Origin: Amphiscolops sp. MND2022
Lineage: Eukaryota
DNA length: 64,000 bases
Assembly (NCBI GenBank): GCA_964187785.1
Contig: OZ076409.1
Coordinates: 45,942,001 to 46,006,000, forward strand
Reading direction: 5' to 3'
A program made the translations under genes and the position numbers. The notes below the pieces were generated by a model, which saw only the letters and a program-made list of their open reading frames with translations, was not told the origin of the DNA and did not search any database. Below, one piece after another: positions 10,520 to 32,119 of this stretch (position 1 is its first letter; every line of letters starts with the position of its first letter).

Positions 10520-11310
10520 AGTGTATACTACTTGTTTACCAGCTACATTATGTTGTTAGCTATGAAACGAAAAAAACTAATGCTGTATTTTGTTCATATC
10601 ATAATACAATACAAGTTTACCATTTTCGAGAAATTAAGTGAGTTTTTTCAAGAACATGATTTTTCAAAATTGTTCGTTCATGCTTATGTAGTATATCGTG
10701 AACTCAAATGGTCATAGAAAGTGTGACTCGTACTGTATGTCACTGATTTCCATTGAAAATCAATACTACGGTTTAAACAGAGTAATGCAAGCAACAGCCA
10801 TTCAGAAAAAAAAAGAATCATTTGTGCTTTGCTGGATCATATGTTCTTTGCTGGATCATAAGTATGATGTCATGCATAAACTTAATTATTAAATTGATAA
10901 TATAACGAGGCACTATTTTTGAATAGAGTGTAACGATGATAAAAGAATGATTCCCTGAAAAAAGCTGTCATGCAACTAAAAATAGACCCTACAAAAATGA
11001 GAAGAAAACGCTTCAATTCTTTCCTTTTAATCTTTTGCAGAAATTAGACCAACCTTTTCTATCCTTCTTCAAAGTACAAACTGTGATTAACTTCATCTGC
11101 ACTTCTATGTCATTTAGTTAATTTGGTGAAATGTATGAATTTTTTCAAATCGTTCTCTACATAAAACCTGTTCATTTTCTCAAAATAAAAGAAGTTCTTT
11201 TCACCATCAAAGCAACATATTACTTTAATTGAGAATAAGAGAAACACACGATCAAAGCGAGAGAAAGATAAGTGCTCCAGAAGCAAAAGCCTCACAGAGT
11301 AATAAAACTA
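10520..11310 (+). repeat. Diverged interspersed repeat, copy 1 (copy 2 at about 14250-14930)
   Basis: Shared colinear blocks, e.g. ttgttcgttcatgctt, gtgactc.tactgta, agataagtgct.c.gaagcaaaagc.tcac.g.gtaat. Confidence 0.6.
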
Positions 11311-14120
11311 TGATAGAGACTTGAAAGTTGAACATTTCGTTTTTCCTTTGGTGCGGAGAGGCAGTTTCAAATGATGGTACACAAACAGAGTATGAGATGC
11401 AAGTGTGGACCCCGAGAATGACAGATAAAACAAACAAAGAAATGCTTGAATTGAAAAACAAATGATTGAAAAGATAGGGAAGATGATGAGAGAAATGACG
11501 AACAGCAAAAAATGCAATCAGACCCTATTGAGAGAAACAACGAACAACCTAGTTAAAAAATAGAAACTCTGAAACCTACCATTACAACGCACCAGGTCCT
11601 AGAGAACCAACTTACCACTCTGGAGCCAACATGGAAAACTGTCCTCCAAAATGGACACTCACTGAAACACAGAAAACACTCATCGAACGCTATCAAAACT
11701 CCGAAAAACACATAAACCATACAGCGCCCAAACAACAACTTTCATCATCGAAGGATCTAAACTACTACAGCCACGCCTCACCAAACGGGAGGAGACGAAA
11801 AACTGGCAGGATGCAACCCATCAACCAACAAAAATTGACAGTTTTTACACAACGTTCCGACTCACAGACCCATGACAATAAAGAAAACGAGTCTGAAAAC
11901 GTTCAAAATTTTGTAAGCATCTGAAAGAGAACAAACACCACAGCACTCGTTAACAGAACCTTTTTCAAAAAACAACACTCTACCTCTTCACAACTGAAAA
12001 CCCAACTGAATTTGCATCACCACAAAAATTGCCCTAGTAGATGATCGATCCCGAATCACCTTACCATCAACAAGGAAAAAGAGACATATTTCCAGCTGTT
12101 CTCTTGTCAACGAACAATATTTTAAAAAGTGAAAGGCATAGGTATAATTTTTCAATGGATTTTGAAAAACTTACACTTGACAGTTCAATAGATACCGGAG
12201 CTCTCGCAAGAGCCTTCTCAGAACAAGCTCAGCAAAATCAAAACATTAGCACCGGAAGCTATCTCTGACATATGTTCAGCTCCAATTTTAGAATATTATT
12301 GGCAGCTAACGGACCCTTATAAACACCAATTGGAACAGTCTGTCTGAGTTTTTTTTGGAGTAGCTTCAACGTAATGATAACCCTTTTGAATCTTGTTCTT
12401 GGACTTTGCTTCTCGAAACGAAATACCGCCATTTTATATTTCAGCCAGGGGTTTCAGACTTTTCGAGTTTATCAATGCAACTAAAACTAGAGCACATCCT
12501 TCAAACACAACAATCAACACCACCACTTCCAAAAGCAAAATACACAACCAGGCGAAACGTTACTTAATGCAAGCTTACATTACAATTAACAATTAATTAC
12601 CAATCGGGAAAAACAGTGAGTGCAACAAATATGTTGTAGTCTTATGTGGATTCTTCAACTCCATTATGATTCATGCGTTTCAAGAATTGAGAAAAGTGGA
12701 ATGAAGTAATTTTCTAGATTTTTTCACTAATACCGTGTGTAACTTGCGACGAATGCCACATCTTAGTTATCATGATGCAATTGGCATAGCAACGTCTTCC
12801 GCGCACCTTGGAAAACATGAAACAAACTTCCTAGTTTTATCTCTCAGTACAGTCAACAATAACATAGTGGATATCAAGTATTCAATTGTTTGAATTGCCA
12901 TAAACAACAACAACCAACACTCACCTACCTGAGTTCCGTGTTGGAACTGCCGGTCAATTTAAACTTGTCAAACCCTCAATTCTAACGTTCATCATGCTTC
13001 AAAGAACCGAATTCATAGTTGTGTAGCTCAATGAATTTCCTAAAGTAAACAACAAAGATCAAAAGAATCAGCAATTTTGAATCCCTGCACCTGAATAACC
13101 GGGTGTTCCGACCACATACACACCTATTTTAAAACGAATGTTTGACGAGCTATTGGAGCTATATTCCTTAGAACACCTCAACACACATGACAAAAAATGA
13201 CGTGCCGAATTCCTTGAACGCTTCAACTGGAGTGATACTACACTCATTCTTTTCGATAGCCAAAATTGCGAAGAAATTCCAAGGAAAATGTGATGTCTTC
13301 GCAAGACATAGGTTTGACCTCGGAGCCAACAGCGTAGAGTGTTCACAGTCATTCTTACGCAAACGATGATCGTAGAACTTCATTAGTACGGAACCATGTT
13401 TCATGGTACAACCCTACCTTTTTATAAGTACGCAAGTCCTATCTTTGCAAAAAGGCATAAAGTCGACCTCAGGGAGACTAAACAACCTAATCTCAGAAAA
13501 CTATGTAAATGATAACTGCCCATTTAGCGAACTTCCTGACGCAGCCTAAGTTTTCTGTAGAAAAGAAACTTCCCGTAAACTTGACTTTACACAAGCTTAC
13601 AACTGCTTGCAAATGGCAGACTAACAATCCAGTCAAATTTTTGCATTCTATTTGACAGTTACTCTTAACATACCGACAATTAGCACAAGGACTAAAAGTA
13701 GATGACATTGGATATGCAGCAAAGTTAGTCATAGAACTGTGTACAAACATTCGAGCGGTTTATGAATGCGTACGAAGTGCGGGACCAAATGTATCAATGT
13801 CAAAAAGACTACAAAGCTGTATCGAGTTTCTGAATTGTTATAGAAGTTAAATACCACGACTCTCCGATGAATCCCACCCTTCTTCAATTTTTTAATGGAA
13901 ACCAATGATTCTACATCGCTCTCCAATGATCTTACCACAAGTTTCGCACAACTCAACAAAATTCTCTTGCAGTCGTGCCAAATGGCACTAAAACAGCCAG
14001 TCAAAGACAAACAGCCTATTCTACTGTCGAATGCAAGCTTTACAGCTGCAAGATATGTCATCATGATCGATGCTGACCTTCCACAGAAAATACAATCTAA
14101 AGGAAAAACGTACGCATCAA
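11310..14120 (+). mobile_element. Heavily decayed Gypsy gag-pol relic
   Basis: RT remnants at 13200-13810 (DVFARHRFDLG; TLPFxKYASPIF; KLDFTQAYNCLQMAD; YRQLAQGL; VDDIG) and RNase H start (YVIMIDA...QSKGKTYA). 11390-11500 resembles 26505-26600. Many stops and frameshifts. Confidence 0.8.
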
Positions 14121-14249
14121 GAGCAATTGATTGATAAACTTGTAACACTACACAACTGAAAATTTCTATATCAGTCAAAGCGTTTATTGAGTTCAGACGA
14201 AGCTTTTCTGAGTGAATAATGTTGACTATGCTTGCATTTCAGTTAAAAG

Positions 14250-14930
14250 CGTACTTTATATGTTTACCATTTTCACACAGCTACAATACGTAAGTAACTA
14301 TGAATTGAATAAAATATGCGGTAACTTAGTACAGTAGTGCTTCACGTAAAACAGTACAAAAATCATTTTCAAGATCATGAGTGGGACTTTTCATGAACAT
14401 GACTCTTTAAATTTGTTCGTTCATGCTTGGGCAGTATAACGTGCAAAATAAAAATCAATTGATATCAAGTGACTCATACTGTACGTAACTAAACTTCGAC
14501 TGATGATCAATAATACGGTGGACACAACATAGTGCAAGCAAGAGCCAATAAGATAGCAGATTCACATACGTCGAGCAGGATTCAAATTATAACTATGAAG
14601 TCATGCTTAACTCTATTTAATCAATTGATGATGTAACGGTCCAACCTTTTCCATCCCTCTTTGATGCTCAAACTGTGAATCACTTCATATCAACTTCTAC
14701 TTCACTTCGCTACTTTGGTGAAATGTTTGGATTCCCGAAAGCTGTTCTCAACCTAAAACATGTATATTTTCTTCAACTCATTTGAAATTTTTCTCTCCAT
14801 CAAAACAACATTTTTTTCTAACCGAGGTTGGAAAAATAGAGAAACAAACAATATAGGCGAAAAGAATTAACCTCACTTGAGAAATAGATAAGTGCTTCGG
14901 AAGCAAAAGCATCACGGGGTAATGAAAACA
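14250..14930 (+). repeat. Diverged interspersed repeat, copy 2
   Basis: Colinear with 10520-11310 (same blocks). Confidence 0.6.
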
Positions 14931-15540
14931 TCAATGAGACTCTCAGTAAGTTGGAAAATGTTAGTTCAGTTATCTGCGGAGGAGCAGTTGTCACAGGCGG
15001 CCGCCAGTGATGGTAACATGAATTCTGTCTACCACAACTACCAACTTGCACTACACAACACTCGGGACCTAACTTAAAACTATTATAACAAATAAAACTG
15101 TTCACGATATTGCTATATAATTAAATATGTATATTATAGGCGGATGCTTCTATTATGTGCGTCTTTTTGTAAAAATTGAACATCAAAGCGCACAGGCAAA
15201 TGAAACGTGTTCAAATGTTTTCTTTCCTGTCACCTTGGACCTGGTATCAGTTTCTTTTTCGACTAATCAGAGCGCAGTATTGTTCTCGGTTAGTTGCTGA
15301 AACTTATCAAAATAAGCTCGTACGGCCAAATTAGCTGCTACGCCATTCTCGGCCTTCATGTACATATGTGCTGTTCATAGCTAAGTAAAGGACGTTATGT
15401 CCATTTAGACAGTGATTGGCCGCACCCTCATCAATCAATTACTGAGTTGTACTCTTTGTAGTGCTACGTGGAAACCCACCCTGATGTTTTAAAATTGTAG
15501 AAATTATTAACAAATATGAAGTTGGTCCATCGGATCAGTG

Positions 15541-15900
15541 TATGTATTTTGGCCTTTACGGCCAAAAAATACACATGCAGTGTTGATTACGCGTATGCGT
15601 TGCATCATCAGAACAGGTTTCTTCAATATTGCAGTGGATTTCGCTGACGGTAAATTTGGAACGCGTGCAGCGTATTCCACTAACAGACGCTGTTACGTGC
15701 AGTTGATTCCCTTTTTTGCAGATTTCCTCGCTGTTAATTCCGCTGCAATACATTGGAATCCACTATTAAGTACCTTAAACACACGGATCTTGCAGTGGAT
15801 TCCACTTAACACTGCCGTGGATTCCACTAAACGCTGCAGTGGACTCCACCATTGGCTGTAGTGGACTCCACTGCAATGTTTTAGTGGAGTTAAATGAGTT
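15541..15900. repeat. Array of short palindromes GTGGA(T/C/A)TCCAC plus a hairpin
   Basis: Hairpin tgtattttggcc-tttac-ggccaaaaaataca at about 15543-15573. About 8 palindromic cores, the last four at about 21-22-bp spacing (15792-15872). Confidence 0.7.
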
Positions 15901-16555
15901 CTTTCAAAAACCAACCTACACAAGTTATCAACCATCGAAAAGAAGTTGAGTTCATGTACTTCAGTGCCTAAAAGTTCTTCCGTTTTGTGTTCACTTTCGA
16001 AAATGAGATACGTTTTCAGAATCAGCAAGTGTCACGAAAAGAACGATTCAAAATCTCTTCATTTGGTTGAAAATTATCAATAGTGAGTTTTTGTCAATCG
16101 TTTCATTTTGATACTCGCACCGCTTTACCGCTTTAGTTACACTGTTATTTTTTTCATTCTTTGATTAAATTATAGGGACGTCAAAATTTCACACACAGCT
16201 CATGCGTGTATTTCAGGAAGAACTAGTTTTCATTTTTCATTTGCATCATGGTGGATACCAAAACTACAAATTGAACTACAAGACGAATGATGAATGAAAA
16301 TTAACCTATTGTTCTCAATCAACCCCTCAACTAGATTTAGGTGAAGAAGAACTTGCAAGGGCTCACTGAAATTCATATTCACGGTGTTTTGTATCGGTAT
16401 TATAAAAAAAACATTTGTATCTGTAGCAATACAATATAGTGAGTTAATACAAAATTGCTAGTGAAATTAAAATACAAGAAGTGAAAAATTGAAGGCCCAT
16501 TAACAAAAAGATGATTGTTTTGAAAACGGAAGGAGTGTTCTGACGATTCCATCAG

Positions 16556-16990
16556 TCAAATATCGGCTGGGAATCTGTAATCAAAACGGAGCTGCTCGAA
16601 TGGTAGAATATCCCGTGTAGCTCGAAACACTACAATCTTATCGCCAATTTGAAGCAACTCAATCACTGTGGGCTTAATGTTGGCGCCGTTTGATTTCAAC
16701 TGCGAGTGGTTGGCCAGGCGTCCAGGGCAGCGAATATTTGAGTGAAGAGGACATATCTCTTTGGAGGCATCAATGATTCTTTTAGAGGCAACACTTTTAA
16801 CTTCCAGAATGAACTCCTGCTCCACACCTTCTTTCTGGAGGACCTGGCGTAATGACACGTTCAAATACGCCAAGCCAAGGTAATCCACAAAATTATCATC
16901 CTTTGAAAAATTCTATGTGGCAATCACGCATCTCCCAAAGTTTCGACATTTTCGCTAAACACATTCCAGGCCACAGCTGCGTCTCACATC
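16556..16990 (-). pseudogene. SET domain lysine methyltransferase (PR-Set7/KMT5A-like, transposon-type variant)
   Basis: Reads QLWPGM / FGRCVIAT*NFSKDDNFVDYLG...FILEV...IIDASKEICPLHSNIRCPGRLANHSQLKSNGANIKP...IVVFRATRDILPFEQLRFDY. The RxxNHS and ExxxDY motifs are intact. One in-frame TAG at 16915-16913 and an upstream frameshift. Confidence 0.9.
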
Positions 16991-17129
16991 GTTGCGACAA
17001 CATAATTTGTTCTTCGTAGGACAAATAACGGGCAAGTCCAGCATACCGAAATCACTTGGTCTCAGGTACCTGCGAAGATTTTCTAAATTACTGGTTGTTA
17101 GAGAGAATCAAAACCTGCGCTTTCATTTT

Positions 17130-17579
17130 TTACACGTTCTGGTTCTCATCCTCCAGCGAAGTCCACTTTTCGAGCTGGAAAAATGCCGCCACTCTTGACC
17201 CAAGACAGTTAATAGCAACTTTTCCTGAAACGTGTTCAAAGTATAGCAAGGCCCTGGCTAACTGGTGAGTGTACTTTTGCTGGTCTTGGCGGGCGCGAAC
17301 AGCGTTTCTCACCTCGTCTTTGTCGAAACCTTCAACGTTCGAAAGAACCAGATTCATTTCATGTTTCAGTTTGGCCGTTTTGAAGCAGGGGTTATTGGAA
17401 AGTGGCTTCCGTTCCACGACTTTAGTTTTCATTGTATTTTGATCTTTTTCTTCTGCTTTTTTGCTTGAAACGAAAAGTTCCGCAACAGAATTAACGCGGA
17501 AGTCCGTTTTACCAATTAATTTAACAAAGACTAACTCTGCATTGATTGGACGTTTGTCGTACTTTTCGTATCGAACACA
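17130..17579 (-). pseudogene. Pre-SET linker ORF of the same gene
   Basis: Open frame 17579-17130 (…EVRNAVRARQDQQKY…RVAAFFQLEKWTS…) lies directly upstream of the SET remnant on the same strand. Confidence 0.5.
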
Positions 17580-19684
17580 TTACAAAACACAACTTTCATG
17601 AGCGTGAAAAGCTTATTAAAAATCCTCAAACGCTCCATAGGGGATTTTTCACTGGCCCCCAGTGTATTATTTTTTGTATTAATATTACCTATTTGTATGT
17701 TTCAAAATTTCTGGAAGCTTAAGGTATTTTAATAATTGGTAAAAACAGAGGTTTTTGTATCTACGTTATCATTAAACCTGATACGACTTATACAGATTTT
17801 TAATAAATTGGCAATGGCTAACTTGGTGTGGTTGGTAAGAGCAAATGGCTTAATTTGTGTAAAAAATACTTTCAATGCTTCAACAAGACTTACGGGTACT
17901 TTGTGAACTGTGCGTAATATTGATCCAATCGTGTGTTCCACACAGAGAATGAAGGCGTCGCTCAGTGCTCAGTGGATCTGTCACGATTTGCCCACCTGAG
18001 TGTACCGTGATATTCCGGATGAAACTTTCAAGCATAGGTGGTACCGCACAATCGAACAGGGTTGTGATTATGCGTCGAAAGGATTCCAACTTAGCTTTTC
18101 GTATGTTTAGTCGAAATGTTTTCGTACACGTTGTTGTCGAAGTAAGTAACTTTCGCGCATTTGGATTGGCTGTTACTTAAATTATCCTCACTGCACTGGG
18201 AGCCAAACGGACGCGTCTCGGGTGGCGCATTGAGCTGGAAGGACACCTTGGTCCGGGTTGCATTGCTCTGGGGTGGCACGTTCTGGTGAGGCAGTAAATT
18301 CCGTGATGGGGTCCCTGATGCAAGAGGTTCTCAGGCGGTAGTCAGATTTTGAGCATTCCGCAGTAAATTTTTAAGAGCGTCTATGGACGTGTGTTCAACC
18401 AAGTGCTCGATCGCATCGGTGTTCGACATTCTAGTTGCACTGAACAAACCCTATTCGTGGACCGATGGAATTGGCAAACAAGCTGGCTGACAATACAGGG
18501 ATGCGTCATCGAGAAAATCTGGTGGCCCATTCCAGTCGGTAGATCGTTGATGTGAGTTTTGCACAGACGTAGAAGTCTAGGGTGGACTCAAGAGATATTT
18601 GAAATTTTGTTAGGCATGCTGGAAATATTCATGAACCTAGGTGCACAAATCTTGACGGTGGATTTTGCTGAATGAATCAAAATTACGATGTGAAAAGAAA
18701 GGACTGTTTTGTTTTTAGCTGTTTTGATAAAGCGTTGTTTTACTAAATAGAAGAAGATTCGATTTGGGGGAATGTTATAGTCCCAAACATGTTTAGTTAT
18801 ATCCCCATTGTTATTTGAAGAACTCAGTGGAAGACACCCACGTTCTCGATGAGAATCCAAAAGACGACGAGGGAGTACAAGAGACTAGGAACATCGGGAA
18901 GAACCAAACCAAAAAGAACTAAAACACAAACACAGGAAATAGACTTTTCAACATTGATCCCGAAAACCAATGTTGCAAACAAATTAAAGTATATACCAAG
19001 TGGATTTGATTAGCATATGCAAATACATTAACAATGGATCCCACAAACAATTCTTTCCACATTTGCAAACCAATTCGAAAGGGGTACATTCAGTAACTTT
19101 TCAGTCCAGAATAGATTTAAATTTCTATTGCAGTGGATTTCGCTGTTTTGGAAGGTAATCTTCACCTTGCGCTATGTGGAATCGACTAACGTAATTCATT
19201 AAAAAATAGTGGGTTCCATAAACAAATGCTTGAACATTTGCAAACCATTTCAAAAGTAGTATATTCGGGGTATTTTCCAGGCTACTGGAAATCAGCAAAA
19301 TTTTAAAGATAACGAAGATCTTATATACGTTGTTCACTTCTGAACTAAACAGTTTGATATAAAAACAATAAGTTATAAAACTTTGTTCCAGACAGCTTCA
19401 GGTAGTTCACCATAGAGCATTTTTGTCACAGCTTGTTTTGCAATGTGGGCTTGTTGTGAAGACCTGCTTGTAGAACGCAATTTTCATGCTCAAAAAATCT
19501 TCAAAAGTGTCGCAGCTTGCACTGAGAGGTAGCAGGGTGTTTAAAAAGATCATAAAAATGAGGTCTGTAATTTTTTCAACAGACTTGATTTCAAGATTTT
19601 GTGATGGAGTAGTGGTCAAATATCTATGTAGATTTTAACATCAAGATTTCCAAACTTGTGACATCATCGATTGCGACTCCTAAC

Positions 19685-19933
19685 CTATAGCCAAGACGTT
19701 CTTCTCCTTTTGAAGGATGCTGTGGTCACGTTTAATCGTCTTCTGCATTAATTCGGGGAGTTGTGCCTGGTGTAAAGGTCCAATTGGCACTGCCTTGACT
19801 GTCCCCGTGGAGGCGTACACTGGTTCTTTTGGGTCGCGATAGGTCTTCTCTGGATCCCTTAATCCCAGTTGATGCAGATTGAAAGCTGGATACACATGGT
19901 AACAAAAGGCATTGACAATGATGAGTGGAGCGA
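19685..19933 (-). pseudogene. Exon of unknown domain within the JmjC-SET cassette
   Basis: Pyrimidine-rich acceptor cacttttctctttgaAG at 19935-19934, an open frame (APLIIVNAFCYHVYPAFNLHQLGLRDPEKTY...), and donor G|GTTAGG at 19684. Confidence 0.45.
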
Positions 19934-20229
19934 CTTCAAAGAGAAAAGTGCAAAGTTACGTTTTCTTTTGAAGAAATTACATTAAAATTGTTGAACGTTT
20001 TGAAACCAGAACCATTAAATTCCGTAGTTCACCACCCAGTCCGTGGAACAAATGAGTTCTTTTTTCTACATTATTAGTTCCCATTGATAATTAACAAACA
20101 TTTATTGCCATTTTGACGTCGTCGAGCTCACTGCTGATCTGTTCTTTCAGAAGAGTAAGGTGTTGGCTAGAGAAGTTGGGGCTCCATGATCATCTCAGGG
20201 AATTGAGTTTCCGCTGAAGTTGTCGTATT

Positions 20230-21345
20230 TTAAACTGTAACAGCATAAATACGAACAACTGCAGGAAACACTTCTTCTTCATTTAGTTCCTGCTGACTGG
20301 CCTTGAGTTGGCTATCGACAATCAGAGGGAAATGGGTGACAGCGAGGAAGTTGGAGGCAAAAGCAATGGAGTCCCCCCTTCGTCGCAACAATGTGTGGCC
20401 AGTGTGCAGCAAAAACCAGGATGTCGCCTGTTTCCACCACAAGTTTGTGGACCGCCCTGTCAGAGCATTCAGGTTCCCGAAGGAAGTTCGTCTAAAAAAA
20501 AACGAAATATTATACATTTGAACAAAACAACTGGTTCAATGATTTTGAATCATGTGCTTGATTGATTTTGTGCTCTTCTCAAAATGATACCTTGAGATGA
20601 ATATATTTTCAGTACATGCTCTGAGTACAAATACCTCATTGTGGGGATTTTGCTCCACTTCTCAATGAGCTGCAAATTAGCACTTGTCGGCTCCACTCGC
20701 CAGATCTTCACCCCATGGGCGACAGTATAAAAGGCAGTTGTGCTGGAGAAGTCGACATACGTCGTTTGAGACCAGCAAATAATTGGATGTAGCCTCAGTG
20801 AAAAACCCTGCTACATCCAAACACTCAGCTGCTAGGTGGTCAGCCACACAGTATCGGACAAAATCTGCTACTTGGTCAAACCGTTTTTTATATCACTCCA
20901 AATGTGAAAGGGACCGCCATATTTTCACCACTTGCTATAAAGGTTGAAAAACAGCCTTTTTTGAGAAATATATATTTTTAAAAGAGTCTCCGTGAAAAAC
21001 TTTGTTCAAAAGCTAAAACCGGACCCTAAGCAAAGATGAAAATATGCCTCCAAAGTCATTTTTTGTAACAAGCACTTCCAAAAATCAGAATAAAAGACGA
21101 TCATCTGCTGGAGTTTTGTAATGTTTCACTAAGTCGTTTCGGTATCTTTTCAATGCCACAATGGCTGACGTATTCGATATTGATTTGTTATCATCTATTT
21201 GATCCATCAAGAGTGGTCGCAGATCATTACTTTTCATCGGGTTGATCAAGAGTCAAGGGCTTATGATATATTCTTCAGGGTCTAGAATGACGGTAGATTT
21301 CATCATTTCGAGTACGTATTCAACAGTGATGAACATGAAACCCCC
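20230..21345 (-). pseudogene. JmjC histone demethylase domain (KDM2/KDM7-PHF8 family-like), spliced and degenerate
   Basis: Fragments in order: FITVEYV...MKSNDL...DLVKHYKTPADDR; NYLLVSN/(H>Y)VDFSSTTAFYTVAHGVKIWRVEPTSANLQLIEKWSK; GT-AG intron 20634-20492; TSFGNL/ECSDRAVHKLVVETGDILVFAAHWPHIVATKG/DSIAFASNFL...FP. This matches the KDM2/7 pattern YCLMS..HIDFGGTSVWYH..G.K...PT..NL.L...W...GWIHAV.T..D.LAFGGNFL. Frameshifts and stops present. Confidence 0.85.
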
Positions 21346-22804
21346 GACGCAAACCTTTTGCAGGCTAAAACTGCTGGAGACCACTTTTTTCCTAAAAACA
21401 GTTTCATTTTCTCTGCTTCGGGCGTCTGTTGACAATTGGCTTGCGGAAAAATGTCTATGAAGCTTCAATTTTGACCTCATTGCTTCCAATTGATGTCTAT
21501 CGCCGGTCCCGTTGATGAAATCCTCTTCATCTTTGACAATAACATAAAAATTCAAGATGTTTGAATGGGATTTCATTAGACTCTCTGCGTTTTCTTTCTC
21601 ATAAACCGCACCTTCCGTTTGGGAAATTCTATCTTTGAGGAGATCCTGTGTGAGCCACGGTTGGACGCACCTACAATTGTACATCTCAATCCTCTTAGAA
21701 GATCGCAAATTCTCTTTTTTCGCCAACAGCAAGGCAGAATACCGCCAGGGGATGTCTACAAATGTCTAGATAAGTTTTGGAACCCTCGAGAATCTCTTCA
21801 GTTGTGAGTGTTTCTCTTACATGTTCAATGACATTGGATTTTTTTCAGAAATTGTTGAAGAAATATCCAGGAACCGGCAAAACGAAAATGCAGTATCCAG
21901 AAATAGTGGATCTTGATTGTAAATGGAGCCACCGCCTCTCATGTTCCTGGATTGCAAATTTCTGGGCGCGTTGCAATTCAGTTTTTCCAAGCCTTCGCAG
22001 AGGTGATTCCATGGCTTCTCTATGTATCGGCTTTCAACTAGTTGGGCTATCAATGGAAGCTTGAGCTTGTATGGTGACAGCCCTTTCACCCAGAGAGAAG
22101 CAAATGGATTTGAAAGTATGTTTCTGCCAAGCGTTTGTGAGTGTCGAAATCAAATGTTCCCTTACATCTCAAGAGAATAGCACACTAGTTTAAACTTTGT
22201 CGTAGAAGCTCACAAGACGTCATACGTCATAAATTGACATATATCTCTCTTCGTTTCTCTGATTTATGGCGTCTCGTTTGTCAAAGAAATGTAGATGTAA
22301 AGACTTCAGTACTTTTGCAGCCCACAAGTTGTACCCATCCTCTTTTTCAAGAAGTATCTCGGTCGTCCAAACTCCGTCGTCCAATCTCCGTCATAAAGGT
22401 TCGTGATTGTTCCAAGTTGAGCACTTCTAAGTTATTCTGTTTCAGAAAAGACGGTCTTTCAGATTCGCAGCTGGTCAGATTTTTTTCAAAGCGCTGTATG
22501 CTTAAAGCTTCGTCGGGATGTTTTTCGTTAATTATCTTCTGAGCCACTCTTCTATTATCATTCTCAGTGTTACGCGTTATCATGTATGTAGCGTCTGGGC
22601 AGATTGTTCTGACATCGACTGTGCTTGATGATGCTTCTGTAGACACATGTTGTCTGAAAGGGATCTTCAAAGATGATTGTCTTCCACCGATATCTGAGCA
22701 GCAGGTGGGAGCAAATTTTCATCGCATACATTTATCGGAAGTTGTGAGGGATAAAAACTTGAACGTTCAGTTGAAATTCCAAGGACCAAACGCGTCAAGA
22801 ACGG

Positions 22805-23700
22805 CTACGGCCTGTCACAACTGTATGTAATTTCAACGCCCAACGCTTGTAGTTCTTCTGTCTGGCGGTATAGCCACCCAGATTCTTGGTTACTTAAGAT
22901 AGACGGGCCACAATTTTGTTCCATTGCATATCGACTATCGTTGCCACAAGAGGATGCAAAACAGAAGACAGCTTTGGATAATTGGCCGCTAACTGTGGTG
23001 TTAAAAATTCTGAATGCTAGACGCGTAACCTTAACCCCCCCCCCCAATTTCGCAACTGACATCCCAAATATCAATTTTAAGGCCTTCAAGATGCGTTTTT
23101 GCAGTGAAGATAATGATGCAAACGTCCCTGTTTTCAGTGAACTGACTCGAAATACAGAAGAGGTTCGCTCAGGCTCGCAAATTGTATCAAACATTTTCAT
23201 TATGAGGCTAATGGCTCTTTTGATGTGACGACGTGACAAAAATAGACTACCACTGCCTAAACCAACCGGAACTAGCATTTGTCGACTTGCATTGAGGATG
23301 ACTTCCTTGTTGCCTGTTTTCGTTTTGATCGAAAGGTCGTACCTAAAGCACTCGAAGGAGCCCCTGTCATCCAAAAGAGCCGTGAACAAGTCTTGAATGT
23401 GATTACCGCTTGCGCTCCTTTTCCGCCACGCGCTACGTTTCTCATACTGTTCTTTGGGAATTGTTGCTAATCCGTGAATAGGTATACCATGCATTGTAGC
23501 AAAATTCAAGACTCTGGTCCAAAAAGTTTTTTCAATTGTTCTGTGCCTTTTTTTGAGTTGCATTTGCGTAATATTCATATGTAACTTTTGCTGGTCTTGT
23601 TGAATACGACTCCGGTGTTTTCTGTAGCACTGCCTTTTCAGGGAATGTTAAATCAAGGGGTGTTTTTTCAACCACCTCATGATGAGAAGAAACTTCATTT
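22805..23700 (-). pseudogene. Putative tyrosine recombinase (Crypton-like), catalytically degenerate
   Basis: 257-aa ORF with YR-like motifs in the right order: SGN[H]IQDL..LLDD (box I R>H), IKTKTG (Lys hairpin), SLFLSR, TRLAFRIFNTT (second Arg), ASSCG[N]DSRYAMEQN[C] (box II H>N, Y>C). Each substitution is a single-base change from the canonical residue. Confidence 0.5.
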
Positions 23701-25239
23701 GTAAAAGTAACGAAATTGGGGAAAAATCAGGTGTTGAAAAATTTTGCAACGAATTCTTTTCTCTTTTCGTTCCAAAATAATTCTTTATAGCCCCGCAGAC
23801 TTGAAAGTTTCATTATTTTCGTTGCAACAAAAACAGATGCCTGGGGCTGTCCTTTAATTGGTAAATTCTGAGTAAGATGGTCTTTCTTCAGAGTGGTCCG
23901 TACGACCGATTCAGCAACGGTTGAAGTAATTTTCCTTTGACGAATTTGTAACTTGCGTCTTTTGTGACTTCTGATACGCCTCAATTTAATCCTCAACTTC
24001 AACCTCAAATAAAACTAGTCTTGCAACATATTTCTCATGGTTTTACCGCTCCGCACGCTGTATAAAGATTTCTTCGACACTTTTTTGAAAACTTTTGATT
24101 GCACGTTGAACCAAAACTACAATGTCATGCGTGCGTTTACTAGTAAAAGATAAAAATAGGTGTGACTGTTTCCCAAATCATATGGAAGGTTTTTTCATTG
24201 ATTTTCTCAGTTAGTTTTTGTCTCCACCGTGAGTCGGTCGACATTATATGGACAATTTTCCAGCAATTGATTCAAATGTTTTTCGAACGTGAGTTGACCA
24301 TGAAATGGAACACAGTTCAAGCACAACTGAGTTGCTTTACCTGCTGCTGAGAGTACTCAACTTGGCAAAAAAATACAAATATTAGAGGAAATTTTCATAA
24401 TAGGGTGTAGAAGAGAGGAACGCATCAGGTGTGAGTTGTAACTATTCATAAAGAGTGATTGTAAAATTCCCACTATTCGCCAATTTCTGCATGTTATTTT
24501 TAAAAAGTCTGGGACTTTTTGCTTTTTCCCACACTTTTCAACATGTAGTTTTTGCAATTACAGTAGACATTGGCTAATCGATTCACGTCTAATCCAAAAT
24601 CTCGGGTAAACGAACTAAATTTTCAATCCCCGGCAGTAGCGAACATACTCGCATGTTTTCGTTTTTTCGAATTTTTCGCTGAATGAAAAATTTTTCGCTG
24701 GTCCTACCAACATGCGAATAGCTGATGTCGACGGTAATTAACATAACAAAAAGATTTGAATACAAACCAGAATCCTTCAAATTTAAATGTTTTTGAAGAG
24801 GGACAGCTTAGAATTGAGATACAAACTTTGATTCCAATAATTTCCTATTTTTTGAAAGGTGTGATGGGATAAAGTTAAAATGGTCAAAAGTTTTCCAATA
24901 ACGTGGTCATTCACGTGTTAGTTTGAGAGATACAATACACCGAACCAACCTGAGAAATCCGAAAGAAGAACTTTTATGTTTCATAAAGGTTTCAATCATG
25001 TTTCAACATGAAAAACTGAAAAGAAGACATTTGATATTTTTTATTCAAGTTTCAGCCATGTTTCTACATGCAAAATTGAGAAAAAAAGAAATTTTGAAAT
25101 TTTATTCACGTTTATTGACCTGTTCTTTCACTTGTTCATTTGTTTAAAACAATCAGCTTTCACATAATCAAAAAATTTCACTGGTTTTGAGCGTTAAAAT
25201 CTAATTTGTCATGGTTCAATTGTTACAAGATATCAACGG

Positions 25240-25650
25240 TTTACGCATTTTTCTGACCGTGCAGTAGATTCGCCTTTGGCTTACAGTCAATTCCTCTCGT
25301 TTTGCAGTCAATTGCCAGAGGTGAAAAGTGAAATCGACTGTGCGCCAAAGTGGAATTGGCTGCGAGCCAAAGTGGAATCCACTGTATGCCGAAGTGGAAC
25401 CTACTGCAATTTTCAGCGAATTTCGCAGAAAGTTGAAATAGGATGACGCGATTGTTTCCATTCGGTTGGCAGTGAAAGCAGTGGATTTTGGTGCACGCAT
25501 TCTTGTACTGAGCTAGACATGTTAGTGGAATCCAAAACAGGCTACAGCGGAATCCATTGAAATTCAGTGATATCCATGTTTATTAACACGGCAGTGGATT
25601 TCGGTGACTTAATAGCACAAAGGTGTGCTAACCGACTTTTGACACTGTAA
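25240..25650. repeat. Second GTGGA(A/T)TCCAC palindrome array
   Basis: Repeated agtggaatccac, gcagtggattt and gcggaatccat motifs related to 15620-15900. A single motif also occurs at about 19135. Confidence 0.6.
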
Positions 25651-25949
25651 TGATTATGTTTAGGTGGACTAAGTGTCGATGTAAACATTGGTGGCCTGTT
25701 AAACTTTGTTGGTATATTTAGGACAAGATTACGTCACAAAGCTCTTTTCCGAATCTTTGTTTTCGGATGCAGTTCTATTGATAGTGTCGTGATGCCCTAA
25801 ATTTAGGATGTCATTCTTCATGGGATAAATATAGGAGTTCTCAGAAGGCTCTGACACAGTTTGGAGCGTCTTTACCTGAATGAAAGCTTGCAGAAAAGGA
25901 TTTCAAGAAATAATACACTATTACTCTCTCGCACCAATTTGATGCCTTC

Positions 25950-26840
25950 AACAAAAAAAGACAATTAATGCAAAAAAATCTAGAGAAATGGACGACTTGA
26001 TGTCTGATCTAGATAATCTAGACATAATGACAGGAAGCGAAACCATAAACCCTATTGATTGGAAGATAGCAAAGACAATTGGGGAATTGATAGCCCAATA
26101 TGACACTGAGTCCAACTCTCATCCTAGAAAAAAGTCTTCCCAGGTGAAAGATTTTAGAGATTTTGGTCATGAAAATGCAATTCCTAGACAAGATAGCTCC
26201 CTGAAAATCATGGAAACAACAACAAATGGAATTAATTTGAGGTTGTCTCAAGAAATGGATTCCATGGTGTTCTTGATGCATTCAAAAATTAATAGGAACA
26301 ACATAAACTCTGCGAGAACCGAAAGAGTGATCCCAATGATTCAAAAAATGTGGAGTATGTTGTCTTCAGGAAACAAGGACACTGACTCCTGTTCATAATC
26401 AAAAAACCAGGAACAAGAACTGTATGTCTACATTTCATCTAAAAGACACGGAGGACCTTAGTCCTTACAGCAGTTTCAAATGATGGTAAACAATGCGAAA
26501 ATGAGATGCAAGTCTGGTCCCAGAGAAAGACAGATAAAACAAACAAAGGAACGTCTGAATTGAGAAAAGAAATGAAAGAACAGCTGAGAAGATGATGAGA
26601 GAAATGAAGATTTTTGAAAGAAAGCCATCTGCCTCTAAAAAGAAAACTTACAAACGAACGACTTCAAAAAGAGAAACTCCAAAAAGTATAATTGATGAAG
26701 ACGGTGAACTTGACGCAACTGATAACGATGATCAAGAAAACGATATTCAGTATAATTTTTCCAGGTCCTCTGAAATAAACGAACTTAGAACCCCAATACA
26801 GCATGTCTGCATTCTTCTTGAATTGACATTACAGTAGTTG
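25950..26840 (+). mobile_element. Fragment of a Gypsy LTR/gag N-terminal region
   Basis: ORF MPSTKKTINAKKSREMDDLMSDLDNLDIM... shares its N-terminal pattern with the LTR-borne ORFs at about 2960 and 6795 (RKxRExxMxxDLxxxDI). It is followed by a segment similar to 11390-11500. Confidence 0.5.
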
Positions 26841-28157: not shown

Positions 28158-29220
28158 TGGTGACAGGAGTCTCGACGAACTCAATCCCAGCTCCAAATCT
28201 GCAACAACCATGCAGAACTCCCCCATCGCCTGTCGTAGATCACGCAAGAGAACATACCCAATCCATCAACGAACCACAAATGTTTGACGTCATGACGGGA
28301 TTACAAAACTTGCGTACCACAAGGACTGACGGAATGATCCAACCGAAATAATTGCCAAGTCAAGTGTCACTCTTTCGCGGAAATAGAGAAGAGTATAATG
28401 AGTTAGAATACCTACTAAAAAACCACCTCCGCCCACATATGCAAAAACTGACGGAAGAGCAAAAGCTCAACTACTTTCAAAGTCTGCTCAGGGACGAGGC
28501 CATTGAGTTCTGGCAAACCCTGAAGATCCATGCTGAAACGACGCTGGCAGATTATCCTCTAGCCTTCAACAAAGAAAACGCCAAGAAAGACCTCAGAGAA
28601 GTGTCAAAATGCACATTTGACCGAATAAGGTACAATGCAACAGTAGAATCATTCACGGGTTCTCTTACAAAATTCAAAAAAACCGCCAAAAAGGCATACG
28701 GAGAAAAAGCTAGCGACATAGCCGAAACATTTCTGTTCGCTATACTACCAGTGTCGATACAAAACGAACTTGCCATGGCAGGCAAGCACGACACCACTGT
28801 GGAAGCGATCAAAAAAATTGTACAACGACAATGTCAATATGCGCAACTAATTCCCATCACATCTTGCTTGCAACCCTTGAATCAGGCGTACAACTACCAA
28901 GAGAGACAACAAGCGAACCAACCAGCCTCAACCAACAACTCCGGAAATCCCACAACCACCAAAGAAGTCAAGCGGAAGTTCGAAGGCAACTGTCGCTACA
29001 GCAACATTGTTGGCCATAAATGGATCGAGTGCCGTAGTAGACTCAGAGATGAAGCAAACGGCACATACACAAAACCCAACAACGTCCACAACAAGCAAAC
29101 AACAACTGCCAACAGCATCAATCCGACAAACCACAGTACAACTCCAAGCTGGTATGCCAGATCTGTGGGAAAGTCGAGCACTTAGCACGAGATTGCAGAA
29201 ACAGAGTACCAGGAGCTTCA
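28094..29220 (+). pseudogene. Gypsy gag
   Basis: ORFs 28094..28351 and 28352..29185 are in frame across one TAA. Capsid-like LNYFQSLLRDEAIEFW. Knuckles CRYSNIVGHKWIEC and, after a frameshift, CQICGKVEHLARDC. Confidence 0.85.
28158..28170 (+). other. Primer-binding site (tRNA-Leu-like)
   Basis: TGGTGACAGGAGT immediately after the LTR, one mismatch from the complement of the common tRNA-Leu(CAG) 3' end (TGGTGTCAGGAGT). Confidence 0.7.
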
Positions 29221-29779
29221 GCCTATAGAAACGTACCCTACAAGAAACAGTCGACAACATAGAATCGATAGTTCTGTAGGGATTTCAAAAAATTCCAGAA
29301 TAATGGACAACCAGCTTACCAAGTCACACAAGCAACCGAGAAGCCAGCAAAAACCCAAATCCACAACGACTGCTATGACGTGGAGTACAATGGCGAATTC
29401 GAAGCGAATTCAAAAAACTTGTGAAGCCTTGTCATCCTACAATAAACCAGACAACAAGTGCGCGCAACAAACTACAGACTAACAACCACTACGACTGTAC
29501 GACCAAGACGTCAGAATGTCGGCAGAATACCGAAAGAAGGTCTCAACCCTCCAAACGATACTACGTTCGAAAGGTGGCTCACAACAATTATCACATCCTT
29601 CCTATTGTTGACGACGACGATACCTGCACGACTAATCAGTGTACTCAGACCGAAAACGACGATGACGCCAAACGGAAACGGAACATGAAGACTCACCCCA
29701 CAGGCAACCCAGGTTGACCATCCAGCCAAAGCAGAGAAGAACAACCACAAGAACAACTATCCCAAGACAAACACACACA

Positions 29780-32119
29780 TCAGACCGTTGAGGCACAGAG
29801 GCAATTCAGAGCGCAATGTCTGAGAATGAGCTCATACGAATACTCCAAGCACACCTAGCAGCCCAACTTGAATACCCAGCCCCGGCCATCAAAGTTCAAA
29901 TTGCCAAAGGAAGTATCGTAACAGTACGAAAACAAGTCCATCTGCGTTTTTTCATTGGGGGAAAAGTGTTCGAAGAGACATTCATGATCTTGCCTACAAT
30001 GAGTGAAATCCTAATTCGAATGTCCTTCTTCAAAAAATACTGTGACCCTGGACCTTGCAAACAGCATTGTACGATTCTTAGAGATTACCTTCCAGCTCAA
30101 ACCACCAAATGGAAAAGTCAAAATACAAATGTTGGAGCTCAGGGCATCACAGAAGACAACCATTGCACCCAGAAAACAAGTCTTTATTCCCGTGGTGGCT
30201 GAATGGGACATTGTCACTTTAACAGGCACAGTAGAATCGTTTCCGGCATTCGAACGCAAGACGGAACTACTAGCGTTCCCATCGTTGTCCGAGATGCAGG
30301 AACAACAGAGCCATGTCCAAGTTACCAACCACCTGGACCACGCAATAAAAGTCCCCTAGAATACAACACTTGCAGTATTCAAAATACTAACTCCAAATCA
30401 GGCCAGAAACATACAACCCATGACCAAGGAACAACTGACACTGATTTCCAAATTCCCTGATGAAGCTCACAACGTGATCAACAAGTTGTTCCATCGCAAG
30501 CAACCACGGACAAGCGATGGTACCCAACACCCGAAACATGCGACAACCCTGAAAAACTCAACAAAAACGTACGTCGGATATACGACGGAATCATAAAACT
30601 CCGAGAAGCTGAAAAGCTTGATCCCACATTTGACGACGATCAACGACAGACGTTCCTCAAAAATTTCAGCTGGGACGAGCAGGAGCAACAGAGGGTTGAA
30701 TCACTGCTAGTCAAGTACCACATGATTTTTGCACGTCACCATTTGGACATCGGCATCAACACCGAGTTTAAGATCAAGCTAACGCCTAAACATAATGATC
30801 CTGTGTACGCGCAAATTTTACCCACTCCAACTAACTTGAAAGATGACTTACTGGTTGAACGGGCCCTGATGCAGGAGTACGTGATCATCACAACACTTCC
30901 GATCATCACACTTGCCCGATATTTGCGCAGCGGAAGCCCCATGGCAAACTTCAAATACTAGTCGAGTTGAGACGCATCAACCACCTCCTCAAGACGAGTT
31001 TAACCAGCACAACCACCCAGTTACTACAATAGCAGATGCGGTCCAACACATGGCAGGCAAGAAAAACTTCTGCAAGCTCGATTGTTGGCCTACCACTGCC
31101 TCCAGATGGCCGACGAATAATAAATCCAACTTCTTGCATTCAACTTTGGCAGCAGAACCTTCGCATACCTCCGACTAGCCCAAGGGTTGAACAGGTCACT
31201 GTTAGCGGTCAACAGTACGATCCAAGAGTACCTTGACGCACTAGTGAAAGCAGACAAAAATGCACAGTACGTTGAAGACATCACTGCAAACAACGTAAAC
31301 GAGCTGGTAGACAACAATGAGGCAGTGTTTCAGCAGATTCAAAAAGCAGGACTGAAACTCTCAACATCAAAGTGCGCCTTTGGACACCCTAAGATTGAAT
31401 TCCTGCGTCGAAGCATAGCGAACAAAGGCATCACACCACTTGAGGGCCGCATCGAATTCCTCAAAACAATGTTGCCAACATCAGTCAAATCACTGCAGCG
31501 ATACATATGATTCGTCCAGTTTTACAGACAGTACATCCCGAAACTAGCCAAAAAACTTGTAGCACTGTACAATTGTTGCAGAAAGATGTCAAATTATTAC
31601 TAACACAGATACACAAGGAGGAGACTTTTGACATCAACGAGAATCTGGCACGAGCTGCAAGATTGTCCCTCAGGTTACCAATACCCGAAAAATAATTCGT
31701 CATCTTGTGTGATGAAAGCGAACACGCAGCGGGATACGGACTTTTCATCGAAGACTACACAGAGACGAACGACGGAAACAAGAAATCGTATGCACCTGTA
31801 GCGTTCGGTTCCCAGAGATTCACTGACGGTCAGATGTACTAACAACGTACGCGAAAGAGTTGCTGGCCTCGATGAATTTGCACACATTTTGTGGGGAGTC
31901 AAAAAACCCACAATTGTGATGGCTGAAAACAAAGCATTGACACGCTTCTTTCAGTCGAAACGAATCCCGCCTAAACTGTGGAACCATTGTGACCAAGCAC
32001 TGCAGTTTGACTTCGTGCTGGCCTATGTACTAGGGGTAGAAAATCCAGCAGCAGACTACTTGTCTCCACTTGACATCAACCCCGAAGAAAGGATTCATCT
32101 GAAACTCAACAACCAGATT
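29780..32119 (+). pseudogene. Gypsy pol: protease, RT, RNase H (frameshifted)
   Basis: Protease remnant (GTEAIQSAMSE, decayed DTG; FMILPTMSEILIRMSFF). RT (IFARHHLDIG; FCKLDC; YLRLAQGL; QYVED, decayed YVDD). RNase H (LCDESEHAAGY; APVAFGS; ENPAADYLS). Confidence 0.9.

What the first reader, a model, noticed from the sequence alone, without database searches (positions are those of the whole stretch)
16556..24008. Candidate novel mobile element carrying a tyrosine recombinase plus both a histone demethylase (JmjC) and a methyltransferase (SET)
Seen: on one strand within 7.5 kb, in 5'->3' order, a YR-like ORF (23700-22805), about 1.4 kb of unknown coding sequence, a KDM2/KDM7-like JmjC (21345-20230), further exons, and a SET domain (16990-16556). 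GT-AG introns are present and all parts are decayed by stops and frameshifts, in a TE-only neighbourhood. Established: Cryptons are intron-containing YR DNA transposons; KDM2/7 JmjC enzymes remove H3K36/K9/K27 or H4K20 methyl marks; PR-Set7-type SETs write H4K20me1. Inference: an element that encodes its own writer and eraser to remodel chromatin at its locus or evade silencing. I do not know of a described transposon with both domains.
Basis: partly seen in the sequence, partly recalled or inferred. Interest (0 to 1): 0.92.

Follow-up and report, generated by a model that had tools for sequence, protein, structure and literature searches.

The report
Giant DNA transposon carrying histone enzymes

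Summary
The JmjC (KDM2/7-like) and SET (KMT5A/SET8-like) remnants are real and lie on one strand. The "tyrosine recombinase" is not one. Its family has no integrase signature, and a confident AlphaFold model of a homolog matches only RAG1, Transib and RAG-like transposases. The "unknown 1.4 kb" is the rest of that transposase, plus a BRCT domain.

The unit is a true mobile element. Nine full copies from the same assembly are 16.5-17.3 kb long and share a 22-bp terminal inverted repeat (CATTACAGTGCCAAAAGTGGGT). Each has a perfect 2-bp target-site duplication in unrelated flanks.

Intact copies encode:
- a 1001-aa transposase with BRCT;
- an intron-containing gene with C2H2 fingers, JmjC and ELM2, with cofactor residues intact;
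- a conserved 420-aa ORF of unknown function on the opposite strand;
- a 644-aa SET protein.

The window copy (about 15600-25652, minus strand) is old (72-87% identical over aligned blocks), internally deleted and catalytically dead.

Divergent relatives carry overlapping subsets of the same genes in other arrangements. The SET gene and the unknown ORF show dN/dS of about 0.25 between lineages, so the cargo is maintained rather than incidental. I found no published transposon with both enzymes. Repbase could not be checked.

The parts
25631..25652 (-). 5' terminal inverted repeat of the element (CATTACAGTGTCAAAAGTCGGT; 2 mismatches to the family TIR)
   Evidence: Only match in the window, none expected by chance. 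It sits at the same position where copies C2 and L007 begin.
23959..25630 (-). 5' subterminal and untranslated region of the element
   Evidence: Collinear with reference positions 1-1602 at 72-87% identity.
20985..24014 (-). Transposase pseudogene (RAG1/Transib-fold DDE family with C-terminal BRCT).
   Evidence: 90 homologs were found. Foldseek gives RAG1/Transib/RAGL as the top 49 hits. BRCT is seen in homologs and in a young copy. In the window copy the family-conserved D370 and D374 are lost, H528 is Y and H751 is C. The DIWGDG block sits in another frame at 23034-23168.
20881..20985 (-). Deletion junction. About 4.45 kb of the full-length element is missing here: one 183-bp repeat array, the C2H2 zinc-finger exons and the N-terminal JmjC exons.
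   Evidence: Reference positions 4869-9320 have no counterpart in the window.
20233..20892 (-). JmjC (KDM2/7-like) exon remnants. 20553-20810 holds the Fe-binding HxD region, mutated to YVD. 20315-20491 and 20233-20535 hold the second His and the C-terminal part, split by a frameshift.
   Evidence: Intact versions match KDM2A at 4.7e-11 and PHF8 at 3e-10.
19683..19955 (-). ELM2-like exon remnant downstream of JmjC
   Evidence: Pfam ELM2 E 0.031 in the window. The intact copy scores 23.2 bits against a cut-off of 21.7.
19002..19274 (.). Remnant of the internal 183-bp tandem-repeat array
18786..19002 (+). Small remnant of the opposite-strand accessory ORF (ORFx). Most of it is deleted in this copy.
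   Evidence: Aligns to reference 12569-12791, inside ORFx at reference 11943-13268.
16556..18765 (-). SET-protein gene remnant. The SET domain is at 16559-16912, with the NHS and FDY motifs still readable.
   Evidence: Pfam SET. Collinear with the 644-aa SET ORF of intact copies. Closest structures are SET8/KMT5A.
15597..16263 (-). 3' subterminal region. The last alignable base is 15616 and the 3' TIR is not recognisable (mutated or deleted).

Best explanation
Window ~15600-25652 (minus strand) is an old, internally deleted, inactive copy of a ~17 kb autonomous cut-and-paste DNA transposon of an unidentified, probably invertebrate, eukaryote.

SHOWN
- The family has 22-bp TIRs with 5'-CA..TG-3' termini, subterminal short repeats and 2-bp target-site duplications.
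- Its transposase has the RAG1/Transib fold, with conserved acidic residues and a C-terminal BRCT domain.
- Intact copies also carry three more genes: a spliced gene with C2H2 zinc fingers, a KDM2/7-type JmjC domain and an ELM2 motif; a conserved 405-450-aa ORF (ORFx) on the other strand; and a 644-aa protein ending in a SET8/KMT5A-type SET domain.
- Overlapping subsets of this gene set recur, rearranged, in divergent relatives. SET and ORFx are under purifying selection between lineages.

INFERRED
- The transposase excises and integrates the element, probably with ORFx as a second transposition factor that binds the subterminal repeats, as TNPA does in CACTA elements.
- The two histone enzymes act for the element rather than the host.
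- My preferred reading (about 40%): they set the chromatin state of the element's own copies. The zinc fingers would target the demethylase to erase repressive methyl marks, and the SET enzyme would write H4K20me1-type marks, which would delay silencing.
- Close second (about 30%): together with the BRCT domain, they shape the chromatin at transposition-induced DNA breaks (H4K20 methylation feeding 53BP1/NHEJ repair), as proposed for SETMAR.
For: MOBILITY
- Nine of nine full copies have the same TIRs, perfect 2-bp TSDs and unrelated flanks, with lengths of 16,505-17,344 bp.
- The 5' end falls at the same base in C2, L007 and the window. The 3' end is the same in C2, L004, L005 and L006.
- Copies are 94-96% identical to each other. 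Cluster sizes are 92 (SET ORF) and 76 (ORFx).

TRANSPOSASE
- 90 homologs. AF2 model pLDDT 79, pTM 0.71.
- Foldseek top 49 hits are all RAG1, HzTransib or BbRAGL, E down to 1.6e-6. The next hit is Hermes at 3e-3.
- L010 has an intact 1001-aa ORF with all 13 family-conserved D/E/H residues.
- BRCT hits.

CARGO
- Pfam hits for zf-C2H2, JmjC/Cupin_8, ELM2 and SET.
- KDM2A 4.7e-11 and PHF8 3e-10. SET8/KMT5A 1.6e-8 to 1e-4.
- The demethylase HxD..H and T/Y/K residues and the SET NHS and FDY motifs are present in young copies.
- In-frame GT..AG intron.

CONSERVATION
- L019, from another sample with a transposase 28% identical, has SET, transposase and an ORFx-like ORF.
- The P0128 contig has a weak SET hit next to its transposase.
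- L020, a second family in the same genome with a transposase 35-49% identical, has ORFx, a JmjC exon match and a match to the N-terminal part of the SET protein.
- L023 and L025 have ORFx next to the transposase.
- dN/dS is 0.25 for SET and 0.23 for ORFx between L010 and L018.

SUBTERMINAL REPEATS: 13-bp and 22-bp arrays.
Against: - No expression, activity or transposition data exist. All functional roles of the cargo are inferred.
- ORFx has no recognisable domain and its AF2 model failed (pLDDT 30).
- The canonical C(2)C / H(3-4)H zinc motif reported for CMCT transposases is not conserved in this family, so superfamily placement is unsettled.
- JmjC was not found on the 10.4 kb contig of the distant relative L019. 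Pfam did not confirm the JmjC exons of L020. The demethylase may therefore be a later addition than SET and ORFx.
- The host organism is unidentified, and all copies come from one metagenome-labelled assembly.
- The window copy itself is dead, so nothing here works at this locus.
Confidence: 0.85

Rival explanations
1. Crypton-like element mobilised by a tyrosine recombinase.
For: The 280-codon open frame contains an 'RRHIKR' stretch that can be read as an HxxR box.
Against: There is no Phage_integrase or DUF3504 hit, and no integrase among the PDB sequence or profile hits. The family folds as RAG1/Transib. The element has 22-bp TIRs and 2-bp TSDs.
Confidence: 0.01
2. Chance juxtaposition or segmental duplication of decayed host genes (KDM2/7, KMT5A) next to an unrelated transposon fragment.
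For: The window copy alone is single-copy within the window and fully decayed.
Against: The same order recurs in at least 12 copies on different contigs, bounded by identical TIRs and 2-bp TSDs with unrelated flanks. Partial versions of the gene set recur in divergent families.
Confidence: 0.02
3. The histone-enzyme genes are neutral passengers captured from the host (as in Pack-MULEs or Helitron captures), carried along but of no use to the element.
For: Inverted 183-bp tandem arrays flank the JmjC gene, and an internal TIR-like site sits in one of its introns. This hints at modular acquisition. The L007 copy and the window copy have lost parts of the cargo. JmjC was not detected in L019.
Against: SET and ORFx are kept next to transposases only 28% identical, in another organism. 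JmjC, ORFx and the SET-protein N-terminus are kept in a second family with a transposase 35-49% identical. dN/dS is about 0.25. Catalytic and cofactor residues and the splice sites are intact in young copies.
Confidence: 0.1
4. The cargo serves DNA-break repair rather than anti-silencing. A SET8-like enzyme writes H4K20me1 at excision or integration breaks, the transposase BRCT domain docks on phosphorylated damage-response proteins, and the demethylase resets the mark. This would be a built-in version of what SETMAR is proposed to do.
For: The BRCT domain is conserved in the transposase family. The SET domain is of the SET8/KMT5A type. SET is the most widely conserved enzymatic cargo gene. 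SETMAR is described as a SET-transposase fusion that methylates histone H3K36 and enhances DNA repair (abstract of PMC2847698, listed). The roles of KMT5A and PHF8 in break repair come from my own background knowledge.
Against: No data. The C2H2 fingers and ELM2 motif on the demethylase fit sequence-targeted transcriptional control better.
Confidence: 0.3

Closest known systems
CMCT clade of DNA transposons (CACTA/EnSpm, Mirage, Chapaev, Transib; Kojima 2025, PMC12730594), especially animal CACTA/Mirage-type elements with 2-bp TSDs (e.g. ENS1_Cis, PMC6004678)
   Same: DDE transposase whose only structural relatives are RAG1 and Transib. It has 5'-CA..TG-3' termini, a 2-bp TSD and subterminal short repeats. 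It also has a second conserved ORF that could play the TNPA role.
   Different: The termini are CAT..ATG, not CAC..GTG. No conserved C(2)C / H(3-4)H motif was found. The transposase is fused to a BRCT domain. The element is about 17 kb and carries a conserved JmjC, ELM2 and SET cargo. No Pfam CACTA transposase model hits.
Transib transposons and RAG1-like (RAGL/ProtoRAG) transposons
   Same: They are the best structural matches over about 550-770 aligned columns (Foldseek probability 1.0). The TIR contains an ACAGTG core reminiscent of the CACAGTG heptamer.
   Different: The TSD is 2 bp, not 5 bp. Identity to RAG1 and Transib is only about 10%. No RAG2-like partner is recognisable. A BRCT domain is present.
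Transposons that encode chromatin or DNA-modification enzymes: HarbingerS and MuDR of Phytophthora with SET genes, fungal transposons with TET/JBP dioxygenases, and VANDAL with VANC (all as cited in PMC12730594)
   Same: A DNA transposon that co-mobilises an epigenetic enzyme, presumably to counter silencing.
   Different: The transposase superfamily and the host group (probably an animal) are different. This element carries both a putative methyl-lysine writer and an eraser, plus ELM2 and zinc fingers. I found no such combination in the searchable literature.
SETMAR/Metnase (host fusion of a SET domain with a mariner transposase)
   Same: It links a SET methyltransferase with a transposase and with DNA-break repair.
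   Different: SETMAR is a single domesticated primate gene. This is a multicopy mobile element with separate genes and a different SET type (SET8-like).
Crypton (tyrosine-recombinase DNA transposons)
   Same: Intron-containing genes inside a DNA element.
   Different: There is no YR domain. TIRs and TSDs are present. The transposase is of the DDE type.

Membership tests
Crypton / tyrosine-recombinase elements | Encodes a tyrosine recombinase catalytic domain (R-H-R-Y; Phage_integrase or DUF3504 fold) | tested here: not met
   No Pfam hit. No PDB sequence or profile hit to integrases. A family member folds as RAG1/Transib.
Crypton / tyrosine-recombinase elements | No terminal inverted repeats of the DDE-transposon kind | tested here: not met
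   22-bp perfect TIRs and 2-bp TSDs in 9 of 9 copies.
CMCT clade (CACTA/EnSpm-Mirage-Chapaev-Transib) | DDE transposase related to RAG1/Transib | tested here: met
   Foldseek top 49 hits are RAG1, HzTransib or BbRAGL. Conserved acidic residues D370/D374, D413 and E744/E747.
CMCT clade (CACTA/EnSpm-Mirage-Chapaev-Transib) | Termini 5'-CA..TG-3' and TSD of 2-5 bp (PMC12730594) | tested here: met
   Termini CATTACAGTG...CACTGTAATG. The TSD is 2 bp in 9 of 9 copies.
CMCT clade (CACTA/EnSpm-Mirage-Chapaev-Transib) | [quoted passage not shown] | tested here: inconclusive
   In a 12-sequence alignment no Cys pair is conserved. Only H528, H741 and H751 are conserved. There was no reference CMC alignment to compare with.
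Transib / RAG-like transposons proper | 5-bp TSD and a CACAATG/CACAGTG-type TIR start (my background knowledge) | tested here: not met
   The TSD is 2 bp. The TIR starts CATTACAGTG.
Transib / RAG-like transposons proper | RAG2-like partner gene (for RAGL) | tested here: inconclusive
   ORFx is a conserved partner gene. It has no Pfam or PDB hit and its AF2 model failed.
KDM2/KDM7 (JHDM1/PHF8) JmjC demethylases | JmjC barrel most similar to KDM2/7, with an HxD...H iron triad and 2-oxoglutarate-binding T/Y/K | tested here: met
   In young copies, KDM2A 4.7e-11, PHF8 3e-10 and ceKDM7 1.5e-5. The motifs TPWHVDF..Y..K and WPHIV are present. In the window copy the first His is Tyr and there is a frameshift.
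KDM2/KDM7 (JHDM1/PHF8) JmjC demethylases | Demethylase activity and substrate (H3K36, H3K9, H3K27, H4K20) | not testable with these tools
   Needs enzyme assays.
SET8/KMT5A (PR-Set7) type SET methyltransferases | SET domain with NHS and ELxFDY motifs, closest to SET8 | tested here: met
   Pfam SET 35-41 bits in intact copies. All 15 PDB hits are SET8/KMT5A-type, counting one Cryptosporidium protein deposited only as a SET-domain protein that I read as SET8-like. GRLANHS and LRFDY are present. The window remnant scores 25.7 bits.
SET8/KMT5A (PR-Set7) type SET methyltransferases | H4K20 monomethylation | not testable with these tools
   Needs enzyme assays.
Autonomous, recently active transposon family | Multiple near-identical copies with intact ORFs, TIRs, TSDs and different flanks | tested here: met
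   L010 carries an intact 1001-aa transposase, a 420-aa ORFx and a 677-aa SET ORF.

The most novel reading that the evidence does not exclude
A previously undescribed clade of RAG1/Transib-fold DNA transposons, present in several eukaryotes, has as stable core equipment a BRCT-tagged transposase, an unknown partner protein, a SET8-like histone methyltransferase and (at least in this host) a zinc-finger KDM2/7-like demethylase with an ELM2 motif. It would be the first transposon lineage known to carry its own methyl-lysine writer and eraser. It would use them to control its own chromatin or the repair chromatin at its transposition breaks.
Probability: 0.45. Interest if true: 0.85.

Novelty: new variant of a known kind. 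Interest (0 to 1): 0.74.

Why it matters
Transposons that carry epigenetic enzymes are rare, and each case shows how mobile DNA fights or exploits host silencing. This one pairs a putative histone-methyl writer with an eraser, adds ELM2 and zinc fingers, and has a BRCT domain on a RAG1-like transposase. Copies in the same genome look recently active.

If the enzymes work, the family offers three things:
- a natural system for asking whether a transposon can programme its own chromatin or its own break repair;
- a new, distant branch for studying the RAG1/Transib transposase fold;
- a possible source of large-cargo (17 kb) cut-and-paste vectors.

For genome annotation, it warns that KDM- and KMT5A-like gene models in such genomes may belong to transposons rather than to the host.

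Tried and rejected
- **Tyrosine-recombinase reading.** Pfam, PDB sequence and PDB profile searches gave nothing. The fold search gave RAG1/Transib instead, so I rejected it.
- **Self-comparison of the window.** No second copy was present. Copies had to be fetched through exact-protein look-ups.
- **TSD of copy C2 from an uninterrupted paralogous site.** The 5' and 3' flanks could not be joined at nucleotide or protein level. Nine full copies settled the question instead.
- **ORFx.** Pfam and PDB gave nothing. AF2 with 7 sequences gave pLDDT 30, which is unusable.
- **Word-based homolog searches.** They found only close relatives of the SET ORF, the transposase and ORFx, and no source gave any of them a name.
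- **First metagenome scan.** The repeat with alignment A5 gave 11 short loci.
- **Viral contigs.** No relative was found.
- **Pfam on the JmjC exons of L020.** It did not confirm them. The evidence there is a tblastn hit and visible motifs only.
- **TIRs in L019.** None were found; the contig is probably incomplete.
- **Another copy of the putative solo LTR around the window element.** None was found, so the window copy's exact 3' end and TSD remain undetermined.
- **Literature.** No paper was found with a transposon carrying both JmjC and SET. Repbase and Dfam are not available here.

Full report
**1. What is in the window**

On the minus strand between about 24014 and 16556 there are many short open frames and one long one (22808-23647, 280 codons).
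- Pfam finds a SET domain at 16559-16912, at 25.7 bits against a cut-off of 22.4.
- Pfam finds a weak JmjC signal at 20315-20491.
- The piece 20553-20810 matches PHF8, KDM2A and KDM7 structures at E 2.5e-4. The iron-binding HxD motif reads YVD.
- The C-terminal JmjC half continues in another frame (20233-20535), which indicates a frameshift.
- A weak ELM2 signal lies at 19683-19955.

The JmjC and SET observations are therefore real, and this copy is decayed.

**2. The 'tyrosine recombinase' is a RAG1/Transib-like transposase**

The 280-codon frame has no integrase hit in Pfam or the PDB. An exhaustive HMMER search found 90 homologs. Several are 700-1300 aa long and have a BRCT domain near the C-terminus.

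Alignments show blocks typical of a DDE enzyme: VDIWGDGxEIGG, FCFAxYRGKDxR, SGDxPF, CPDxTH and PWxHMxEGxEKSNHH.
- Window 21820-22149 carries the last block.
- Window 21256-21765 is the BRCT region.

An AlphaFold2 model of homolog P0007 scored pLDDT 79 and pTM 0.71. Searched against the PDB, its top 49 hits were all RAG1, Helicoverpa Transib or amphioxus RAG-like transposase (E from 1.6e-6, probability 1.0). Hermes followed at 3e-3.

In the window copy the DIWGDG block is thrown into another frame by a pair of compensating frameshifts. Conserved H528 and H751 are also replaced.

**3. It is a mobile element with defined ends**

Exact-protein look-ups retrieved paralogous copies from the same assembly, ENA ERZ25074608 (L001 is the window locus itself).
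- The window is collinear with copy C2 from 25653 down to 15629, at 70-87% identity over aligned blocks.
- Copies C2, L007 and the window begin at the same base. Copies C2, L004, L005 and L006 end at the same base. All flanks are unrelated.
- The ends are a perfect 22-bp inverted repeat, CATTACAGTGCCAAAAGTGGGT.
- Nine full copies (16,505-17,344 bp) each have a perfect 2-bp direct duplication: CT, AA, TT, AA, AA, TA, TC, GT, TC.
- Young copies are 94-96% identical to each other.
- Protein clusters at 90% identity hold 92 (SET ORF) and 76 (ORFx) members.
- The window has the 5' TIR at 25631-25652 with 2 mismatches. It has lost a recognisable 3' TIR.

**4. Gene content of intact copies**

Reference: L010, reverse-complemented, 16,964 bp.
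- **Transposase with BRCT.** A 1001-aa ORF with all 13 family-conserved D/E/H residues.
- **Spliced zinc-finger/JmjC/ELM2 gene.**
  - It carries three C2H2 fingers, a KDM2/7-type JmjC domain and an ELM2 motif.
  - The JmjC exons match KDM2A at 4.7e-11, PHF8 at 3e-10 and C. elegans KDM7 at 1.5e-5.
  - They keep TPWHVDF..Y..K and WPHIV. A canonical 149-nt GTAAAT...TTTAG intron joins them in frame.
- **ORFx.** A 405-450-aa ORF on the opposite strand with no detectable domain.
- **SET protein.** A 644-aa ORF ending in a SET domain. All its PDB relatives are SET8/KMT5A-type, and it keeps the GRxVIAT, NHS and FDY motifs.
- **Repeats.** Subterminal 13-bp and 22-bp repeats, and two inverted 183-bp tandem arrays flanking the JmjC gene.

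Relative to this reference the window copy lacks 4.45 kb (one array, the finger exons and the N-terminal JmjC exons). It also lacks most of ORFx.

**5. The cargo is conserved, not incidental**
- L018, from another sample, has ORFx and SET in the same arrangement. dN/dS against L010 is 0.25 for SET and 0.23 for ORFx.
- L019, a Logan assembly with a transposase 28% identical, has SET(-), transposase(+) and an ORFx-like ORF(+).
- Another distant transposase, P0128, sits beside a weak SET hit.
- L020, a second family in the window's own genome with a transposase 35-49% identical, has four of the genes.
  - They are ORFx(-), transposase(+), a finger/JmjC gene on the minus strand with an FHQDF...H motif, and a homolog of the SET protein's N-terminal region.
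  - Pfam did not confirm those short JmjC exons.
- Two metagenome contigs have ORFx next to the transposase.
- No relative occurs in viral contigs.

**6. How it most likely works**

Shown: TIRs, TSDs, a RAG1-fold transposase, and intact enzymes in young copies.

Inferred: cut-and-paste transposition by the transposase, probably helped by ORFx. ORFx is the most widely conserved partner, and the subterminal repeats suggest a TNPA-like binder. The demethylase, with fingers for targeting and ELM2 for co-repressor contact, and the SET8-like methyltransferase probably act for the element. I see two candidate roles:
- setting the chromatin of element copies to delay silencing (preferred);
- preparing the chromatin around transposition breaks for repair. 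This would also explain the BRCT domain and echoes SETMAR.

I cannot separate these two with sequence data.

**7. Comparison with known systems**

Termini (5'-CA..TG-3'), the 2-bp TSD and RAG1 similarity fit the CMCT clade defined by Kojima (PMC12730594). They also fit animal CACTA-type elements with 2-bp TSDs (PMC6004678). However, the C(2)C / H(3-4)H motif is not conserved here, and the BRCT fusion is unusual.

Transposon-borne SET genes (HarbingerS and MuDR of Phytophthora) and TET/JBP genes are on record (PMC12730594). I found no report of a transposon with both JmjC and SET. Repbase could not be searched.

**8. Verdict**

It is a new variant of a known kind: a DDE transposon with epigenetic cargo. 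Interest is fairly high because of the writer/eraser pair, the RAG1-like BRCT transposase and the signs of recent activity.

Noticed in passing
window 14985-15600 and 25653-26461; repeat copies at 10484-11569, 14212-14984 and 26462-26679: The element sits inside a ~1.4 kb sequence bounded by TG..CA and flanked by a 5-bp duplication (GCAGT). That sequence itself splits a ~1.1 kb repeat whose intact copy lies at 10484-11569. This looks like a solo LTR nested in another repeat. No second copy of the LTR was found in the fetched loci.
   Followed up: partly
C2 (L002+L003 merged) 17198-17219; L004 5687-5708; L005 5681-5702; L006 5520-5541: An internal sequence matches the 5' TIR at 18 of 22 bases (CTTTACAGTGCCAAAAGTyAGT), in the same orientation as the 5' TIR. 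It lies in a presumed intron of the JmjC gene. Together with the 3' TIR it would delimit a 7.7 kb JmjC-ORFx-SET sub-element. This is unexplained.
   Followed up: no
L010 6550-7187 and 12626-13205; window remnant 19002-19274: Two arrays of a 183-bp tandem repeat, in inverted orientation, flank the zinc-finger/JmjC/ELM2 gene in full-length copies. Copy L007 has a deletion (C2 14022-18485) that removes most of that gene, and it lies between these arrays.
   Followed up: partly
window 23034-23168 versus 22808-23647: The 280-codon frame stays open even though the conserved DIWGDG block lies in a different frame. A pair of compensating frameshifts is responsible, so the long ORF overstates how intact this copy is.
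   Followed up: yes
L020 (same assembly, contig ctg184715) 7641-21464: A second, divergent transposon family (transposase 35-49% identical) has ORFx, the transposase, a JmjC gene on the opposite strand and a homolog of the SET protein's N-terminal region, in a different arrangement. Its ends were not determined.
   Followed up: partly
window 17578-17811: About 235 bp in the SET-protein region has no counterpart in the reference element. It is either an insertion in the window copy or a deletion in the young subfamily.
   Followed up: no
window 28352-37172 and 61444-64000: LTR-retrotransposon fragments on the plus strand, with hits to DUF1759 gag, RVT_1 and the integrase zinc-binding domain.
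   Followed up: partly
window 313-786: An open frame with a rhodopsin-type or nematode-chemoreceptor-type 7TM hit just below the Pfam threshold (29.7 bits against 30.5). It is probably a GPCR exon or pseudogene.
   Followed up: no
L008 596-1045: A gene called next to one element copy carries a Monjiviricetes_fusion Pfam hit. It may be an endogenous viral glycoprotein fragment.
   Followed up: no
window 48258-48457: A 200-base run of N (assembly gap or masked). It was left untouched.
   Followed up: no
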